A stretch of 61,937 bases of DNA, counting the filler, from Sluysia triapertura (Eukaryota): NCBI GenBank assembly GCA_046118255.1. It is 4 parts of 4 records of this genome, joined end to end, with 100 filler letters (N's around TTAATTAATTAA, not from the genome) between each part and the next. Parts side by side here need not be neighbours in the genome. Positions count along the whole stretch, not along the records: positions 1 to 15,791 come from JBJNIA010218918.1; 3 more parts are not named here. The stretch is one strand, 5' to 3'. Below are positions 3,776-14,588 of this stretch, in pieces (positions within the stretch are counted from its first letter, which is position 1; the number at the start of each line of letters is the position of its first letter). The notes beneath the pieces were generated by a model. That model saw nothing but the letters and a program-made list of their open reading frames with translations. It did not search any database and had not been told where the DNA came from. The position numbers were made by a program, and so were the translations under genes.

Positions 3776-6700
3776 TTAAGTATCGTTAAAACAAATTTTA
3801 TAATAACGAAAAATCAGAACTTGACAATAGGTATCTGTTTTTAAAGTACTACAATCTATAAGCTATAATTTTTGTGATATAACAATAACATAGTAAGTAT
3901 TTTTATCATGTAACAAACAAAAGTTGACAATAAGATACTGTTTGTAATCGTTCTAAAAATAGTTCACCAATTAAGGCTATTCATTGACAAAATTACGATG
4001 TGCACTGTTCAACCATGATTGCTTGTTCAACCAGAGTTATGAAAATAACTACTCTGGTTGGACAACCAATAATTGCACTAAAAATTTTTCACATTGAAAG
4101 GCCAACCACTATGAATGATGGCAAAAATTTATACATGGAAACTAACAATGTCACCATTGATCGTGGTAATTACTAGTTCATGAAATTAATTGTATAAAAA
4201 TGATAATAACAATAATATTATTATTATTAAAATTTTAAATACATAAACCTTTTCAAATTACATGATCTTTCTGTTTAAGTATCGTATTTCTGGACACATT
4301 ATTTGAAGATCTTTATTATTTTTGAAAGACTAAAAAGCGAAGTGTTGAGATTGTGAACTTATGGTGTTTTAAATTCATATTAAGCATTTTCGATAAAATT
4401 TAAAGATGTAATTGTAATTCTAATGTTATAAAATAACACGTAAATGTTTTAAATAAATTTTTAAATGCTTTTTAATGGTTTTAACTAAAGATACAGTTTG
4501 AATATTGAAAACTTATGACTTAAGTGTTTTATATGAATTATATGAAATATACATTGATGTTTTTGGATAAAAGTGAGGTTTAGATGTTCGAAAATTGGAA
4601 CTTGAAAATGTATTGAAAAGAGAATAGTTTTTAGTGGATCTGAAGGAGATAAATTATAGCCCAGGTTTGGTACATTCTAAAAAGGTAGTTGCGCAATATT
4701 GAAAATTATGATTAAGATTATGTTGATATGAGACTATGTATAAAAATGTTTTTAATGAGTTTTTAAAATTGTGAGAAAGGTGTATAGAATAAATTTAATA
4801 ATTAAAATTTGCGTGAGTTCACCAACGTACTTGACTTACCAGCGAGAGCCAGCCGTTGGATTTTAATGCGAGAATAGATACTTAACTGTTAAAGTAATGA
4901 TTCTACCTAGTACCTTAAATCTGGAGGTGAATATTTAAAAAGGAATTCGAATTAATTTAGTTATATTTCAAATGTAGAAGTTTTAAAATAATAATTTTAC
5001 GTAAATCCCGTTATATGGGATCAGTTAAAAGATTTTTCTTACTAGAATTAATTTCTAGTGTAGGAAAACATATAAATCAATTAAATTTAAGATTTTAAAA
5101 CTATAGAAGTGAATAATGAACTCAGATTAAATAATTTATTAATAAAAATGCAAAAAGTAGAACAGATTAACAAATAGATATAATATAAATCGAAATTTTA
5201 CTATAAACTAAATATAATTAGTTTAAATATAAAAAGAGATTTTAAAATAATATTTTACCTTAGATCGTTATACAATCCAAATAAAAATTCATAAGTTTAA
5301 GTGAAATTTTACAAATAATATTCTTCGAATATCTGAATTTAATAAAAATTGAGCCAACGTGATCCAAAATAGTTCAATGTCTGTGATAAAATATAAAATT
5401 ATTTTCTTTGATTCGAATATCAGTACCGAAATAAAAATTGTCTTGTTTAAACTCTTGAGTAAAGATTTAAAATCAAAATTTTGTTGTTGTGAAAATCTTA
5501 TGTGATTTTATACCTTGAGGTTAGATTAAAACAAAAGGGTATATTTAAAATAAAACTTTTTAATTAAAATAAGTGGATATCGTTAGCTTTGAAAGGATTA
5601 AAATTTAATTTAATTTAAAAATAACATTAGCTTTAAAAATTTAAAATAATTTAATAATAAAAATTAAAAACGTACTTTTTAAAATCTACAAAATCCCAAA
5701 ATTATAAAATTATTCAAACAAACATAAAATGAATTTAAAATAAATTAGATAAATAATCAATAAATAATACATTTAACACACGTATTTGCATTCCTATATC
5801 TTTTAATAATTTTTTATTAGTGATCCTATAAGTGGTTACAACTGTAGATTAACCCGATTTATACCAATTTTTTATTATGTTAAACTTTAATCAATGTTTG
5901 ACTTTTATCAAGAAATGATCGAAATGATCAGTAGCCGGATACGTAATAATCAGATTATGAAATAATATCTGTATTGTGTCTTTTTTGAAATTATCAATAA
6001 TAACTCAATAATAATAATAAAATTTCGATATATTTTCAGTGCAATATAGAATGAATACAAATTAATAATTATTCTTAAATCACAGAAATAATACATATCT
6101 TGAATCATAAATCAGTTAATAAATAAAATACTCAAAATACACAACACACGAAATGTTAAACAAAATAAATAGCAGGTAACAACACGGACCAACTAACCAC
6201 GCTAAGCATATCACTGGTTTAAGTTACTAAAGATGAAACTTCAATCACATATTTACCACAATGGTGTCGAAGTAGTTTTAATGGAGGCGAAGTTTTATCT
6301 TCACTTTATACTTTTGCCGTTTCGTTACTTATTTCTTTTTTTACATTTTTGATAAAAATGCGATTGCTTATATAGTAGTTGGATAATCTCGGAGAAGTAT
6401 TAAAAGTATAGAAATAATTACTTTACAATCTAGTTTCAATAATTAAATTTCGAAGATAATTTCCGTCGATAATGGGATTTGTGACAAACAATCCTTTAAT
6501 CTTATTAACACACAAAATCAAAATTTAACAACATTATGCGACAATTTTTACTATTTAAATAATACATCCACTTAAAATAAATATAAAACTAATTAAATAC
6601 TAATTTTTTTCATAAAATATTTGAATATATATATATATTATACATTAACAGTGCGTTAAAAGTCGATTTCAATAAACTTTCTGAGTTGGTAACTTAATAA

Positions 6701-8144
6701 AAATTACTTTATATATTTTTGATAAAATTTGAAGATATTTAACTTTAAGTTATAGAAAATTAATTAAAATAACTAATTTTTACAATACTTGTATTGACGT
6801 GCTTCACAATATCTCAATAATACAAACGAGATTCAACATTATACTTTAAATTAATTAATAAATGTACGTTTGTATTTTCAAGAACGAAACCTTCTAAAGG
6901 TTTTATCTACGTACTATTCTTTCTAATTTAAAATACCCTTTAATAAACACAACTCATCATGATATTTTACTTTATTCTTATTTTACAAATCATAGCACCA
7001 CCATTAACGAAACCCAACACTAAAAGAGTAGTAATCCAATGCTGTTGACTTCTAGATATGTACTTTGTATCTAGAAACGATAATTTTGATTCATTAAGAA
7101 ATTCAACTTTGATCTGACAGTTTTGTAATGCAAATAATAGAAACGATTATGGTAACCATCGTAAATAATTACTCGAAAAATTTATTATTTCTTGTTGTTG
7201 TCCAACTTTATATGCTTCAAATAAATGCGTAAATTTACTCACATAAAAATTCTTACTAGTTTTTAATTACTATTTATGGTTTCAGTTATTATTATTTATT
7301 TATTTCTAGAATCATTAAAAGTATTATTAATTTTTTGTATTGTTATTTCAAAATATTAAAAATAGTTTACGAATTTAAAGTTTATTAATTTTCATATTCT
7401 AATTTAAATTGACATATTAAAATGATTTTCAAATTTAATTTCTACTTTTTAATCATTTTTATTCTATGGTTTTTATCTATTAATTGAACTGAATCCTTAA
7501 TGACTCCAATTCATTTCTTTCAATAATTATTTGAGTTATATAACAACGTTTGTCATAAAAATTTATGAATTTATTTTTTATTGTTTATTCATACAACTAA
7601 AAAATGTTAAATATCTATTTCATTTTTATCATATATTGAAAATGTAACAGTAAAATGTAATATTTACAAGATTGCTTTAAATTTGAAGATAATTCTAAAC
7701 TAAACGTTTCTTTTAATTCGTTTGAATTGCTAGAAATAATATTGATTAAAAAATAATAAATGAAAGAATTATTATTATTATTATTATTAATTATTTTCGT
7801 AAATGTTTCGAATATTTCATTATTTTTTGGCTAATATAATAATGAAATGTAAAATATTAATAAATTAAATTATTTGATCAGAATAATTATTATAATGAAA
7901 TTTCTTGTTATTTTATTCATTTGTTTAATTAGTTATTGAAAGACATTAAAGAAACCAGTGTATATATATTTGATAAGTTTAAAAAAGCAAAACATAAATT
8001 TTAATTTTCTTAAAATTATATTATCTCTGAATAATATATTTTAATAAAAATTTCTAAAATTATAAAATAAAATTATATTGGCACCAGATTTCCGATTGGA
8101 ATTTTTTTGCTTCTATTAATTATTTTTATTAATAATATTATTTG

Positions 8145-13260: not shown

Positions 13261-13275
13261 TTATTTTCGAATAGA

Positions 13276-13636
13276 TGTTAGACTTGGTAAAATGGACTGA
13301 CCGGGAATCGAACCCGGGACCTTCACTGCGCCCCGTCTAACAATTTTATATTATTATATTCAATTTTCCCAAATGGCACTTTTAGGCCTTTTACCCCAAC
13401 ATATCTCACCTAATTCAATTATGTTTGTCCTCAAACATCTTGTAAATCAGTTAATTCAACATCAGAATGGTATTCGATATGTGGGCTCACCAAATATTTG
13501 ACTTCGAAAAAAGGACTGACCGGGGATCGAACCCGGGACCTTTAGTTGCGCAGTTCGATTCTCTACCGTCTAACAATTTCATTTTTAATATATTCAATTG
13601 TACTACATGGCACATTTTAGGCCTTTTACCCCAACA
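13276..13636 (-). mobile_element. TRIM-like non-autonomous LTR retroelement with tRNA-derived LTRs
   Basis: TAGA target-site duplication at 13272-13275 and 13637-13640. Direct repeats at 13276-13401 and 13495-13636 with TGTT...AACA-type ends. PBS TGGTGAGCCCAC (13492-13481) lies 2 nt after the 5' LTR. A purine tract AGGTGAGATA abuts the 3' LTR. The internal region is 93 bp. Confidence 0.85.
13507..13575 (-). promoter_or_regulatory. tRNA-derived Pol III cassette inside the LTR (not a functional tRNA)
   Basis: GACGGTAGAG (D-loop/A-box-like), a perfect T-arm CCGGG-TTCGATC-CCCGG (B box), then TCAGTCC followed by TTTTTT. The 5' acceptor strand is degenerate. A second, partly deleted copy lies at about 13294-13340. 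Confidence 0.7.
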
Positions 13637-14588
13637 TAGACAACAGCACTATATAAATTAATATAATATCAAGAATTTTATTTCATCGTACAATATTAGT
13701 AAAATAAATAATATTGTTTGAATATTAAGATTTAAAATCGTATTCAATTTACATCTTGTAAAATTGTCAAAACCAAAAATCGAAATTATTGAAAAAGCTA
13801 CAAAATAAATATTCTAAAATGAAAATGATGATATTAAAGAAGTAAACACTGCTCGAAATAAGTATTAATTGTTTAACTGTGGATATCTAAGCCTTACAGA
13901 AAATTTTAAGTGCAGATGGTCTAAAATTCATTTGATAGATATTGATCTTAGATTTCACAATATAACAGTAACATTCAATAAGTATAAGAAATAAGACATA
14001 ATTTAATCTATTTGGTACATCACGGTAACTCAAAATTAAATAATTCAATTCTAACTAAACAAAATCTTACAGAAATGAATAATTATGATGTTTTACCCCC
14101 ATCTAATTTATGGTTCATAACTCGTAACATTAGATGGTGATGAGCATCTTTTTAATGGCCAAGAATTCACTTGTTCTGAACTGAGAAAGAGAAAGAATGC
14201 AATTTTCAATTTTCCTTCAATAGAACACAATGAAATGAATTTCAAATATTAAATACATACATAAATTACTTTTATTACAAACGCAAACAATGAAAGAATT
14301 AAATTAATAATAGCTGCAAAAAATCGATGATATTTTTAAATTTGAAACTACTATCAATGCAATACAATTATTAATTGTTTTTAATTAATTATCTTTTAAT
14401 AAAATCAACAGCAATATGATTTCAAATGAGTCAAAAAAGAAAGATACACAATGATTTGCGGATACTCCAATTTCATTAACCTAGATTTAAGTGATAACTA
14501 TTATAATTTACTAAATCTTGAAGGTCATTTATCTATATTTTAAATTTAAGTTATTTATATTATTAATTTTTAATTTCTTAATTTAATA

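What the first reader, a model, noticed from the sequence alone, without database searches (positions are those of the whole stretch)
13272..13640. 361-bp miniature LTR retroelement whose LTRs carry a tRNA-derived Pol III gene
Seen on the minus strand, in order: TAGA TSD, 142-bp LTR, 2 nt, PBS TGGTGAGCCCAC, about 70 nt, purine tract, 126-bp LTR, TAGA TSD. Each LTR holds a tRNA-like unit, and the 5' LTR copy has an intact T-arm/B box followed by a T6 run. Established: this is TRIM architecture, plant Cassandra TRIMs carry 5S-derived Pol III promoters in their LTRs, and to my recollection only a few tRNA-bearing TRIM families have been described. Inference: a SINE-like LTR parasite in an invertebrate that supplies its own Pol III promoter and borrows Gypsy proteins (4-bp TSD). 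The T run could yield a short tRNA-like RNA versus a read-through genomic RNA.
Basis: partly seen in the sequence, partly recalled or inferred. Interest (0 to 1): 0.85.

Follow-up and report, generated by a model that had tools for sequence, protein, structure and literature searches.

The report
Decayed tRNA-bearing miniature LTR retroelement (Helenus)
This 361-bp stretch is a worn-out copy of a very abundant miniature LTR retrotransposon whose terminal repeats carry a tRNA-like unit, a kind first described in 2024 under the name Helenus, so it is real and tidy but not a new kind of element.

Summary
On the minus strand: TCTA, a 142-bp LTR, TT, TGGTGAGCCCAC, about 70 nt, a purine tract, a 126-bp LTR, TCTA. 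It is one copy of a large family in the same genome. In 26 full copies the termini are TGTT...AACA; 14 have a perfect 4-bp target-site duplication (shifted control 5 of 312). Intact copies are about 405-410 bp. Each of their LTRs holds a complete tRNA-like unit with consensus A and B boxes that passes Rfam tRNA (34-51 bits).

The primer-binding site matches the host's own tRNA-Trp over 10 nt, and over 17-18 nt in some copies. The first ~37 nt of the internal region is an eroded complement of the 3' half of that tRNA.

LTR units greatly outnumber internal regions (about 11,300 versus 470-620 junction hits); three incidental units are solo LTRs with their own duplications.

The window copy is dead. 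Both LTRs have lost the A box, no tRNA is called, and the T6 run is a private mutation of a family T4.

The kind is known: Helenus / TRIMp3 (Kojima 2024). This family matches none of the published consensus sequences by exact motif. RNA polymerase III use and a Gypsy helper are inferred, not shown.

The parts
13637..13640 (-). Target-site duplication, upstream copy (TCTA on the minus strand, TAGA on +)
   Evidence: Identical to 13272-13275. Family-wide, 14 of 26 copies have a perfect 4-bp duplication against 5 of 312 in the control.
13495..13636 (-). 5' LTR, 142 nt (family intact length about 155-160). It has a U3-like part 13568-13636, a tRNA-unit remnant 13513-13567, and a T6 plus U5-like tail 13495-13512. 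It starts TGTTGGGG and ends ...CAAATA (family ...CTAACA).
   Evidence: Alignment to 18 + 22 other copies; boundaries by fuzzy matching; a 17-nt deletion removes the 5' acceptor strand and A box.
13522..13533 (-). B-box / T-arm of the 5' LTR remnant (GGTTCGATCCCC)
   Evidence: Rfam matches only an 18-nt T-arm here; B box scored present.
13507..13512 (-). T6 run after the tRNA remnant; private to this copy (family has ATTTTA)
   Evidence: T4 in most LTRs of other copies.
13481..13492 (-). Primer-binding site TGGTGAGCCCAC, 2 nt (TT, 13493-13494) after the LTR; its first 10 nt are complementary to the 3' end (with CCA) of the host tRNA-Trp
   Evidence: Host tRNA-Trp(CCA) gene at L069:127-198, 67.8 bits. 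Other copies have a perfect 17-18-nt match (L076, L077, L078, L100).
13456..13492 (-). Stretch derived from the reverse complement of the 3' half of tRNA-Trp (CCA back to about position 38), eroded by small deletions
   Evidence: L075 keeps a perfect 39-nt match. In a typical copy (L008) the part beyond the first 10 nt scores 29 against 13.1 +/- 2.5 in 1000 shuffles, none reaching it.
13402..13455 (-). Rest of the internal region, ending in the purine tract AGGTGAGA (13404-13411) and TA before the 3' LTR
   Evidence: Internal region 94-97% identical in the 40 best of 1,466 candidates; median 93% between sampled copies.
13276..13401 (-). 3' LTR, 126 nt, starts TGTTGGGG and ends GTCTAACA. It has a tRNA-unit remnant 13293-13334 with B box 13303-13314, then T4 at 13289-13292. 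A 30-nt deletion removes the A box and anticodon region.
13272..13275 (-). Target-site duplication, downstream copy (TCTA)

Best explanation
Window 13276-13636 (minus strand) is an old, inactivated copy of a very abundant non-autonomous LTR retrotransposon of the Helenus type (a TRIM with a tRNA-like unit in each LTR; 'TRIMp3' in Kojima's terms).

Shown. Family anatomy is an LTR of about 157 nt made of about 69 nt of U3-like sequence, a 71-nt tRNA-like unit with A and B boxes, then ATTTTAYGAAGTCTAACA. After it come TT, a primer-binding site for the host tRNA-Trp, an internal region of about 90 nt that is much better conserved than the LTRs, a short purine tract, the second LTR, and 4-bp target-site duplications. 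LTR units far outnumber internal regions, and sampled lone units are solo LTRs.

Inferred mechanism. RNA polymerase III starts at the tRNA-like unit of the 5' LTR, partly reads through the weak T4 stop, and ends at the T4 of the 3' LTR, so the tRNA-like unit acts as the repeated R region. The RNA is packaged and copied in trans by a Ty3/Gypsy-type element. Priming is by tRNA-Trp, second-strand priming is at the purine tract, and the helper's integrase makes the 4-bp duplication.

This copy can no longer act as a Pol III unit, because both LTRs have lost the A box. Confidence by part: Helenus-type TRIM copy 0.93; tRNA-Trp priming 0.85; Gypsy-type helper 0.6; Pol III-made genomic RNA 0.5.
For: Layout and boundaries in this copy.
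Family: 5,339 first-look candidates and alignments of full copies.
Duplications: 14 of 26 perfect, 4 more match 3 of 4, control 5 of 312.
True LTR pairs: an element's own partner is the best match in 9 of 26 (p about 3e-7) and within-pair identity is 0.90.
tRNA-like units of other copies pass Rfam RF00005 at 34-51 bits against a 29-bit cut-off. A-box region TAGCTCAGTGG and B box GGTTCGATCCC are present in most LTRs.
Host tRNA-Trp gene. The primer site matches it over 10 nt in most copies, 17-18 nt in four and 39 nt in one; the 16-nt complement including CCA gives 30 hits against 1 for the control.
On the sense strand 45 of 51 T>=4 runs lie just after the tRNA unit and 6 elsewhere, against 152 A>=4 runs.
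Counts: LTR 3' region 11,309; U3/tRNA junction 7,101 and 6,067; primer-site junction 468; purine-tract junction 624.
Three lone LTRs have perfect 4-bp duplications.
In L074 the LTR and primer site abut a decayed Gypsy-type pol (RVT_1 2e-8, RT_RNaseH_2 3.6e-8, YIDD).
The published description of the kind matches: two LTRs with a tRNA-like sequence, PBS, PPT, 4-bp TSD in animals, Gypsy-like PBS (PMC10886601).
Against: No RNA evidence: the one run that holds the stretch is not on record as RNA, so Pol III transcription, read-through of T4 and the extent of R are untested.
The T-run asymmetry is weaker than it looks because the copies descend from one ancestor: per element about 1.5 T>=4 runs are expected by chance, so none in the ancestor is unremarkable. 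The contrast with about 6 A-runs per element is only suggestive.
U3 also holds TATA-like and AATAAA strings, so Pol II transcription cannot be excluded.
No autonomous partner with matching termini was found. The L074 junction is unique in the genome and may be a rearrangement or a nested insertion.
Folding programs do not return a clean cloverleaf for the unit, its anticodon stem is disrupted, and its isotype is undetermined.
Only three solo LTRs could be checked. Copy counts rest on 22-mer patterns, whose sensitivity differs between regions.
Host identity is unknown.
Confidence: 0.85

Rival explanations
1. The element is a TRIM, but its genomic RNA is made by RNA polymerase II (from U3 or by read-through from host genes). 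The tRNA-like unit would be a passenger left by an old tRNA-SINE insertion into an ancestral LTR, perhaps kept because it binds TFIIIC or keeps chromatin open, and not used as the promoter for transposition.
For: U3 contains TATAAT... and AATAAA strings about 20-25 nt upstream of the tRNA unit. A T4 stop sits directly after the tRNA unit in most LTRs and would end many Pol III transcripts after about 75 nt. Kojima himself states that Pol III function of Helenus is not validated. Deletions concentrate in the tRNA unit (16 of 16).
Against: The A- and B-box sequences are at consensus and among the best-kept parts of the LTR in intact copies. Element size (about 410 bp) and the near absence of T>=4 runs on the sense strand outside the terminator position fit Pol III constraints. 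AT-rich strings such as TATAAT or AATAAA are expected by chance at 20-27% GC.
Confidence: 0.3
2. The repeat is basically a tRNA-derived SINE (or a dimer of SINEs), and the LTR-like layout in the window comes from two neighbouring or tandem insertions rather than from LTR-type reverse transcription.
For: LTR units outnumber internal regions by more than ten to one. The unit has a tRNA-like Pol III promoter followed by a T run, as SINE heads do.
Against: At least 6,000-7,000 units carry conserved U3 sequence upstream of the tRNA start, which a Pol III-made SINE could not carry. Lone units have TGTT...AACA ends and 4-bp duplications (L072, L013, L071), not A-rich tails with long variable duplications. 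Hundreds of copies share the same spacing, tRNA-Trp primer site and purine tract. Some copies carry exactly the 17-18 nt of tRNA complement expected from tRNA-primed LTR-type replication. LTR pairs share private variants.
Confidence: 0.03
3. The window copy itself is a working Pol III gene that makes a short tRNA-like RNA ending at the T6 run.
For: An intact T-arm/B box is followed by T6 in the 5' LTR.
Against: Both LTRs lack the A-box region and the 5' acceptor strand. No tRNA is called by ARAGORN or Rfam. The remnants fold no better than shuffled sequence (z = 0.93 and 0.00). T6 arose by private substitutions in a copy whose LTRs are already 12% diverged.
Confidence: 0.03

Closest known systems
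[quoted passage not shown]
   Same: Two short LTRs that each contain a tRNA-like unit with A and B boxes; a PBS complementary to a tRNA 3' end just after the 5' LTR; a purine tract before the 3' LTR; no coding capacity; 4-bp duplications; a tRNA unit unlikely to be a working tRNA. Size (LTR about 157, internal about 93, total about 407) lies inside the published animal range, for example Helenus-4_MiYe at 157/94/408.
   Different: None of nine family-specific 12-16-mers occurs in the published consensus file. The hymenopteran families shown are GC-rich, TGTAACG...CCGTTACA and longer. The primer here is tRNA-Trp, reported only for two long Synergus families. Not described there: an internal region whose first ~40 nt derives from the primer tRNA; LTR units exceeding internal regions by more than ten to one; LTR+PBS units without an internal region.
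Cassandra (plant TRIM with 5S rRNA-derived Pol III unit in the LTRs; Kalendar et al. 2008, as summarised in PMC10886601)
   Same: A TRIM whose LTRs carry a small-RNA-gene-derived Pol III promoter and terminator; the same logic of a self-supplied promoter with borrowed proteins.
   Different: 5S-derived rather than tRNA-derived, plant-restricted, 565-860 bp. Pol III transcripts were shown experimentally for Cassandra but not for this family.
Ajax (nemertean TRIM with a partial 5S rRNA promoter; Kojima 2024)
   Same: An animal TRIM with a Pol III promoter in the LTR; LTR copies well above internal copies (1,114 against 151).
   Different: 5S promoter fragment, 5-bp duplications, tRNA-Leu primer.
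tRNA-derived SINEs (SINE2)
   Same: A tRNA-like head with A and B boxes, high copy number, non-autonomous, no coding capacity. Kojima proposes that Helenus arose from a SINE2 inserted into an LTR.
   Different: SINEs start at the tRNA +1, end in a LINE-related or A-rich tail and have long variable duplications. Here the unit has about 69 nt of conserved upstream sequence, TGTT...AACA ends, PBS/PPT partners and 4-bp duplications.
Canonical TRIMs without a Pol III unit (e.g. PbTRIM of the harvester ant, PMC3532108; ta-TRIM of taeniid cestodes, PMC4558846)
   Same: Miniature LTR-PBS-PPT-LTR layout and dependence on an autonomous LTR element.
   Different: As far as I recall, those LTRs carry no tRNA- or 5S-like unit; Kojima calls canonical TRIMs 'TRIMp2'. 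I saw only these papers' titles and abstracts.

Membership tests
Helenus (Kojima 2024) | TRIM layout: two direct LTRs with a short non-coding internal part, total a few hundred bp | tested here: met
   Window copy 142 + 93 + 126 = 361 bp. In 26 copies the median is 155.5 / 93 / 147.5 and the total up to 410. No ORF possible in 93 nt.
Helenus (Kojima 2024) | tRNA-like sequence with box A and box B inside each LTR | tested here: met
   Family level: Rfam tRNA 34-51 bits in both LTRs of several copies; A-box region in 24/26 5' and 14/26 3' LTRs, B box in 20/26 and 21/26. In the window copy only the B-box halves remain.
Helenus (Kojima 2024) | Primer-binding site complementary to a host tRNA directly downstream of the 5' LTR | tested here: met
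   TT + TGGTGAGCCC is 10 nt complementary to host tRNA-Trp with CCA; 17-18 nt in L076/L077/L078/L100 and 39 nt in L075.
Helenus (Kojima 2024) | Polypurine tract directly upstream of the 3' LTR | tested here: inconclusive
   A conserved ...GAATTGGGTGAGATA precedes the 3' LTR in all copies (624 junction hits). It is short and interrupted by T (GGGTGAGA), so its role as a plus-strand primer is inferred from position and conservation only.
Helenus (Kojima 2024), animal lineages | 4-bp target-site duplication | tested here: met
   14/26 perfect and 4/26 three of four; control 5/312. Three solo LTRs also have 4-bp duplications.
Helenus (Kojima 2024) | Sequence identity with a named published family | tested here: not met
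   Nine 12-16-mers from the LTR, PBS, internal region and PPT are absent from the published consensus file. These were exact-match look-ups only; no alignment against Repbase or Dfam was possible.
TRIMp3 (TRIM transcribed from its own Pol III promoter) | Functional Pol III promoter giving element transcripts | not testable with these tools
   No RNA run was listed for the stretch. Indirect only: consensus A/B boxes, T4 after the unit, few T>=4 runs elsewhere.
Gypsy-mobilised non-autonomous element | An autonomous Ty3/Gypsy element in the same genome sharing the primer site and termini or internal ends | tested here: inconclusive
   L074 shows LTR-TT-PBS(17 nt) fused to a decayed Gypsy-type pol, but the junction is unique and lacks gag.
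Cassandra / Ajax (5S-bearing TRIMs) | 5S rRNA-derived sequence in the LTR | tested here: not met
   Rfam finds tRNA and no 5S in copies or window.
tRNA-derived SINE (SINE2) | Unit starts at the tRNA +1, ends in a LINE-like or A-rich tail, long variable duplications | tested here: not met
   Conserved U3 lies upstream of the tRNA unit in at least 6,067-7,101 units. Ends are TGTT...AACA with 4-bp duplications.
Functional tRNA gene | Cloverleaf with a 5-bp anticodon stem, 7-nt loop and anticodon consistent with isotype | tested here: not met
   Rfam aligns only a 3-4-bp anticodon stem with a 9-11-nt loop. ARAGORN mostly returns tRNA-??? with 2- or 4-base 'anticodons'. The minimum-energy folds are not cloverleaves.

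The most novel reading that the evidence does not exclude
The family may preserve reverse-transcription intermediates as genomic fossils.
(1) Its internal region looks as if it was born when plus-strand strong-stop DNA copied the tRNA-Trp primer past the usual stop at position 58 down to position 38. One copy keeps a perfect 39-nt complement that ends just before G37, which I recall being m1G in animal tRNA-Trp; most copies keep an eroded version.
(2) A class of units consists of a complete LTR plus 15-18 nt of perfect tRNA-Trp complement and then unrelated DNA, with a precise U3 start and no target-site duplication. That is the anatomy of plus-strand strong-stop DNA captured by end joining or joined to another template.
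(3) One such unit runs straight into a Gypsy-type pol, as expected if the strong-stop DNA jumped onto the helper's cDNA inside a shared particle.
If so, this genome offers a natural record of primer read-through, strong-stop capture and co-packaging with the helper for a Pol III-type TRIM.
Probability: 0.3. Interest if true: 0.55.

Novelty: new member of a known kind. Interest (0 to 1): 0.33.

Why it matters
For annotation: more than 11,000 tRNA-like units of this family lie in a 619-Mb assembly. They will be miscalled as tRNA genes or pseudogenes, or as a tRNA-SINE, and they break the assembly: many hits lie about 46-50 nt from contig ends. Naming the family as a Helenus-type TRIM fixes that.

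For transposon biology: it adds a high-copy, tRNA-Trp-primed family to a kind described only in 2024 and never tested experimentally. It also gives sequence-level support for real tRNA priming, because some copies carry exactly 17-18 nt of tRNA-templated primer site.

The very high share of lone LTRs, the primer-derived internal region and the LTR+PBS units are modest new details that a specialist could follow up. For the window itself there is no functional consequence, because the copy is a relic.

Tried and rejected
- Host tRNA ending ...TGGGCTCA, needed for a 12-nt primer match: 8 hits against 5 for the control, none tRNA-like. The match to tRNA-Trp is 10 nt, not 12.
- The LTR's own tRNA-like unit as primer: its 3' end (TCAGTCCA) is not complementary to the primer site. 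Rejected by inspection, as Kojima also found.
- Relation to the hymenopteran Helenus lineage, suggested by the ...CCCAC...ACC look of the primer-site region: the consensus sequences are GC-rich and unrelated. Rejected.
- 'LTRs far more diverged than the internal region, so not a real LTR pair': resolved. Pairs are 0.90 identical against 0.88 between elements, an element's own partner ranks first in 9/26, and the internal region is 0.93 between elements. This fits an old burst from sources with nearly invariant internal regions.
- More deletions in 3' than in 5' LTRs (13 against 3): not claimed, because the first sample was chosen by similarity to a copy that itself has deletions, and truncated copies show 5' deletions too.
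- A short form of the unit starting at the inner TGTTAGAC: a pattern reaching 10 nt further into U3 still gives 6,067 hits. Rejected as the bulk form.
- 4-bp duplications around [LTR + PBS] units: none in 7 testable loci.
- GC-rich loci with the primer site TGGTGACCCC and retrovirus-like integrase or env-like ORFs (L081-L098): unrelated to each other and unlike the host in composition, possibly foreign contigs. Not compared or searched further; I cannot tell their origin.
- Host identification: a protein search with a transporter exon gave nothing, and the length window excludes full-length relatives. Run and organism names are coded. Given up.
- Expression: no RNA run. Laying the one run (kind not on record; Logan contigs) served only to check the assembly.
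- Rfam over the whole window and a tandem-repeat scan: nothing else of note.
Full report
**1. What is in the window**

- TCTA at 13637-13640;
- a 142-nt repeat starting TGTTGGGG (13495-13636);
- TT;
- TGGTGAGCCCAC (13481-13492);
- 69 nt of spacer;
- the purine stretch AGGTGAGA (13404-13411) followed by TA;
- a 126-nt second repeat that starts TGTTGGGG and ends GTCTAACA (13276-13401);
- TCTA again (13272-13275).

The two repeats are 88% identical over 126 aligned bases. Each keeps a tRNA T-arm with a B-box match. The upstream one is followed by T6 and the downstream one by T4.

Neither repeat is called a tRNA by ARAGORN or reaches Rfam's tRNA threshold. Only an 18-nt T-arm is seen.

Contigs from the one public run that holds this stretch match both flank/repeat junctions and the deletion junction in the upstream repeat without a difference. 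The run's kind is not on record and it may be the sample the assembly came from. Summed word depth rises from about 12-18 in the flanks to 1e5-1e6 inside. The structure is therefore not an assembly artefact, and it belongs to a very high-copy repeat.

**2. It is one copy of a family with LTR-retroelement hallmarks**

A search of the window's own genome (619 Mb, 263,945 contigs) found 5,339 first-look candidates, and many hits cover the whole 369-nt query. I aligned 19 full copies chosen by overall similarity, and 22 chosen only by their internal region.

All share these features:
- LTR ends TGTT...AACA;
- TT plus TGGTGAGCCCACATATCGAATACC;
- a nearly invariant internal part;
- ...GAATTGGGTGAGATA before the second LTR.

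In 26 copies with both termini recognisable, 14 have a perfect 4-bp flanking duplication and 4 more match at three of four positions. A control shifted by 5-16 nt gives 5 of 312 (p about 6e-19). The duplicated tetramers differ from copy to copy.

Intact copies measure about 405-410 bp, with LTRs of 155-160 nt.

The two LTRs of one element are real sisters. Among 26 candidates, an element's own partner is the most similar in 9 cases and in the top five in 16 (p about 3e-7).

They are old. Median identity is 0.90 within pairs, 0.88 between elements for LTRs and 0.93 between elements for the internal part. That pattern fits a past burst from source elements whose internal region was almost invariant while their LTRs varied by subfamily. 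Without the host's mutation rate I give no date.

**3. The LTR carries a tRNA-like unit, but this copy has lost half of it twice**

In other copies each LTR contains a 71-nt unit. It starts GGGCTGATAGCTCAGTGGTAGAGC and ends GGTCCCGGGTTCGATCCCCGGTCAGTCCA. It passes Rfam's tRNA model at 34-51 bits against a 29-bit cut-off, often in both LTRs.

- Its A-box region (TAGCTCAGTGG) and B box (GGTTCGATCCC) match the textbook Pol III consensus; I am citing that consensus from general knowledge.
- The acceptor stem pairs with a G3:U70.
- The anticodon arm is disrupted, with a 3-4-bp stem and a 9-11-nt loop. ARAGORN mostly reports 'tRNA-???', and the energy-minimum folds are not cloverleaves.

So it is a tRNA-derived promoter-like unit and not a working tRNA, as Kojima concluded for most Helenus families. 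I could not assign the isotype. From memory the 3' half resembles tRNA-Ala and the D arm and anticodon loop resemble tRNA-Cys; this is a lead only.

The unit is followed by ATTTTA(C/T)GAAGTCTAACA, that is, a T4 and then a 13-nt tail ending in the LTR terminus.

In the window copy a 17-nt deletion (5' LTR) and a 30-nt deletion (3' LTR) have removed the 5' acceptor strand and the A box. The T6 arose from ATTTTA by two private substitutions.

Such deletions are typical of the family. All 16 deletions of 8 nt or more in 52 LTRs overlap the tRNA unit, and 14 lie wholly inside it, against 6.4 expected (P about 1e-4).

**4. Primer: the host's tRNA-Trp**

No host tRNA ends ...TGGGCTCA. A relaxed search turned up a genuine tRNA-Trp(CCA) gene, scoring 67.8 bits, at L069:127-198 and ending ...CACGUCGGGCUCA. 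With CCA added, its complement begins TGGTGAGCCCGACGTGATTCGAA. The family's primer site therefore matches over its first 10 nt, at the canonical distance of 2 nt from the LTR.

The 16-nt complement including the CCA (which tRNA genes do not encode) occurs 30 times, allowing one mismatch, against once for the control. Twenty-one of those hits follow this family's LTR end directly.

Four are ordinary copies whose primer site matches the tRNA perfectly for 17-18 nt and then continues with the usual internal sequence (L076, L077, L078, L100). That is about the length a reverse transcriptase copies from a primer tRNA before stopping at m1A58 (role of m1A58: PMC8599865). I read these as copies whose primer site was re-templated by the tRNA during replication. 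This is good evidence that tRNA-Trp really primed the family.

**5. The internal region is largely primer-derived**

L075 carries a perfect 39-nt complement of tRNA-Trp (CCA plus positions 73 back to 38) and then joins the usual internal sequence. The usual sequence aligns to the same 39 nt with three small deletions.

Beyond the first 10 nt the alignment score is 29, against 13.1 +/- 2.5 for 1000 shuffles, none of which reaches it.

My inference is that the ancestor acquired an extended primer copy that stopped just before G37. I recall that position being m1G in animal tRNA-Trp, but did not check it. The perfect version rests on one locus.

**6. Abundance and lone LTRs**

All counts below are for 22-nt patterns allowing one mismatch; all controls gave 0.

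| Feature | Hits |
|---|---|
| LTR 3' region | 11,309 |
| U3/tRNA junction | 7,101 |
| Same junction, reaching 10 nt further into U3 | 6,067 |
| One variant of the U3 5' part | 1,711 |
| LTR end + primer site | 468 |
| Purine tract + 3' LTR start | 624 |

So roughly nine in ten LTR units are not part of a full element. They are also not an ordinary tRNA-SINE, because they carry U3 sequence that a Pol III transcript starting at the tRNA could not include.

Three complete lone units that happened to lie in loci I held have the same termini and perfect 4-bp duplications: ATAA in L072, GAAG in L013 and AATT in L071. They are solo LTRs.

The excess of lone LTRs is larger than the ratios Kojima reports, at most about 7 LTRs per internal part. 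I have no explanation beyond age and LTR-LTR recombination. Pattern sensitivities differ between regions, so the ratio is approximate.

**7. LTR + primer-site units without an internal region**

Sixteen of the 21 loci with the tRNA-true primer site show a complete LTR with a precise TGTT start, then TT, then 15-18 nt of perfect tRNA-Trp complement (24 nt in one), and then unrelated sequence.

- Where 1.5 kb of downstream sequence was available, no second LTR was found.
- No 4-bp duplication surrounds the unit in 7 testable cases.
- In L074 the sequence after 17 nt of primer site is a decayed, AT-rich Ty3/Gypsy-type pol: RVT_1 2e-8, YIDD, RT_RNaseH_2 3.6e-8 and an integrase-like tail. That junction is unique in the genome.

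The anatomy (U3-R-U5 plus a tRNA-templated primer site) is that of plus-strand strong-stop DNA (scheme: PMC6894440). In yeast, retrotransposon cDNA and replication intermediates are known to be inserted at double-strand breaks by end joining (PMC10802722).

Capture of strong-stop DNA, or its transfer onto another template, is therefore my best guess, but it is unproven. My pattern could not see tRNA copies shorter than 15 nt.

**8. How it most likely works**

Shown: the anatomy, tRNA-Trp priming, 4-bp duplications, dependence on outside proteins (there is no coding capacity), and the decay of this copy.

Inferred:
- Pol III starts at the tRNA-like unit of the 5' LTR.
- Part of the transcripts stop at the T4, giving a tRNA-sized RNA.
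- Part read through and end at the T4 of the 3' LTR, so that the tRNA-like unit is the terminal repeat R used for the first strand transfer.

Supporting hints:
- The boxes are at consensus.
- The element is small.
- 45 of the 51 T>=4 runs on the sense strand of 26 copies sit just after the tRNA unit and only 6 elsewhere, while the same stretches hold 152 A>=4 runs.

This last figure overstates the evidence because the copies share ancestry. Per element only about 1.5 T-runs are expected by chance.

A Gypsy-type helper is inferred from the 4-bp duplications, from Kojima's finding that animal Helenus primer sites resemble only Gypsy elements, including a tRNA-Trp-primed Gypsy in Nasonia, and from L074.

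No RNA data exist for this organism in the index.

**9. Comparison with what is known**

[quoted passage not shown] The paper reports:
- PBS and PPT present;
- 5-bp duplications in fungi and the one plant, 4-bp in animals;
- lengths of 311-1,263 bp;
- 113 families in Pucciniales fungi, 51 in bivalves and 40 in wasps, plus fishes, coelacanth, Lingula, nemerteans, a ctenophore and Selaginella.

Together with Cassandra (5S, plants) and Ajax (5S, nemerteans) they are proposed as 'TRIMp3'.

The family here meets every structural criterion (see the membership table) and is of typical animal size. It shares no exact 12-16-mer with the published consensus set. tRNA-Trp priming is reported there only for two long Synergus families.

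I therefore file it as a new family of a known kind. A search for later papers on Helenus or TRIMp3 found nothing that extends the picture. The host is coded and I could not identify it, so I cannot say whether it lies outside the published host range. Its non-coding DNA is unusually AT-rich (19-27% GC in the window).

**10. Verdict**

- Novelty: new member of a known kind.
- Interest is modest (0.33). The extra value lies in the family-level details of sections 5-7.

I built no family consensus or repaired copy. All comparisons used individual genomic copies.

Noticed in passing
L072, L073, L074, L079, L080, L083, L085-L088, L091, L094, L096, L097, L099, L101 (own-genome loci): Sixteen units consist of a complete Helenus LTR, TT and 15-18 nt (one 24 nt) of perfect tRNA-Trp complement, then unrelated sequence. 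There is no second LTR within up to 1.5 kb, and no 4-bp duplication in the 7 testable cases. The anatomy matches plus-strand strong-stop DNA.
   Followed up: partly
L074:1-1583 (minus strand), junction near 1500-1530: The Helenus LTR end, TT and 17 nt of tRNA-Trp primer site run directly into a decayed AT-rich Ty3/Gypsy-type pol (RT with YIDD, RNase H, integrase-like tail) with no gag. The junction is unique in the genome.
   Followed up: partly
L075 (= G000:C178197), from the PBS onward: A copy with a perfect 39-nt complement of tRNA-Trp (CCA to position 38) before the usual internal sequence, although its LTR is heavily decayed. Downstream ORFs contain a LINE-like YADD motif but have no Pfam hit.
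   Followed up: partly
Family LTR, positions about 60-67 and 150-157 (e.g. L025:263-419): TGTTAGAC just upstream of the tRNA-like unit is the exact inverted complement of the LTR's 3' end GTCTAACA, so the tRNA unit is bracketed by an 8-bp inverted repeat. This could be a trace of how the tRNA-derived piece entered an ancestral LTR.
   Followed up: partly
3' LTRs of L002 and L019: The same 20-nt deletion (reference positions 91-110, between two TAGAG repeats) removes the anticodon arm in the 3' LTR only in two different elements. This suggests recurrent slippage between short direct repeats inside the tRNA unit.
   Followed up: no
Own genome, many contigs: A large share of hits to the LTR lie at a fixed 46-50 nt (3' region) or 1-30 nt (U3/tRNA junction) from contig ends of roughly 2-kb contigs. 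The family appears to be a main cause of assembly breaks.
   Followed up: no
L070 (= G000:C56374:300-600), 26-100 and 110-182: tRNA-His(GTG) and tRNA-Glu(TTC) genes lie only 10 nt apart on a 1.2-kb contig (62 bits each). That spacing looks bacterial or organellar rather than nuclear, so the contig may come from a symbiont or contaminant.
   Followed up: no
L081, L082, L084, L089, L090, L092, L093, L095, L098: GC-rich contigs carry the primer site TGGTGACCCCGACGTG (the common animal tRNA-Trp variant, not the host gene I found), some with retrovirus-like integrase or env-like ORFs nearby. Their composition is unlike this AT-rich genome, so they may be foreign DNA. I could not tell their origin and did not compare or search them further.
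   Followed up: no
window:1052-1471 (+): A 139-aa open frame rich in coiled-coil-like heptads (E/K/Q/L), probably an exon of a host gene; not examined.
   Followed up: no
window:13495-13636 versus 13276-13401: The U3 part of the 5' LTR resembles one subfamily (as in L011 and L018: ...GTAGTA.AATTGAATATATTAAAAA.TGAA). That of the 3' LTR resembles another (as in L010: ...TTGG.A.AATTGAATATAATAATATAAA). The 4-bp duplication is nevertheless intact. The element's own partner ranks only 6th of 26. This may be gene conversion or simply age.
   Followed up: partly
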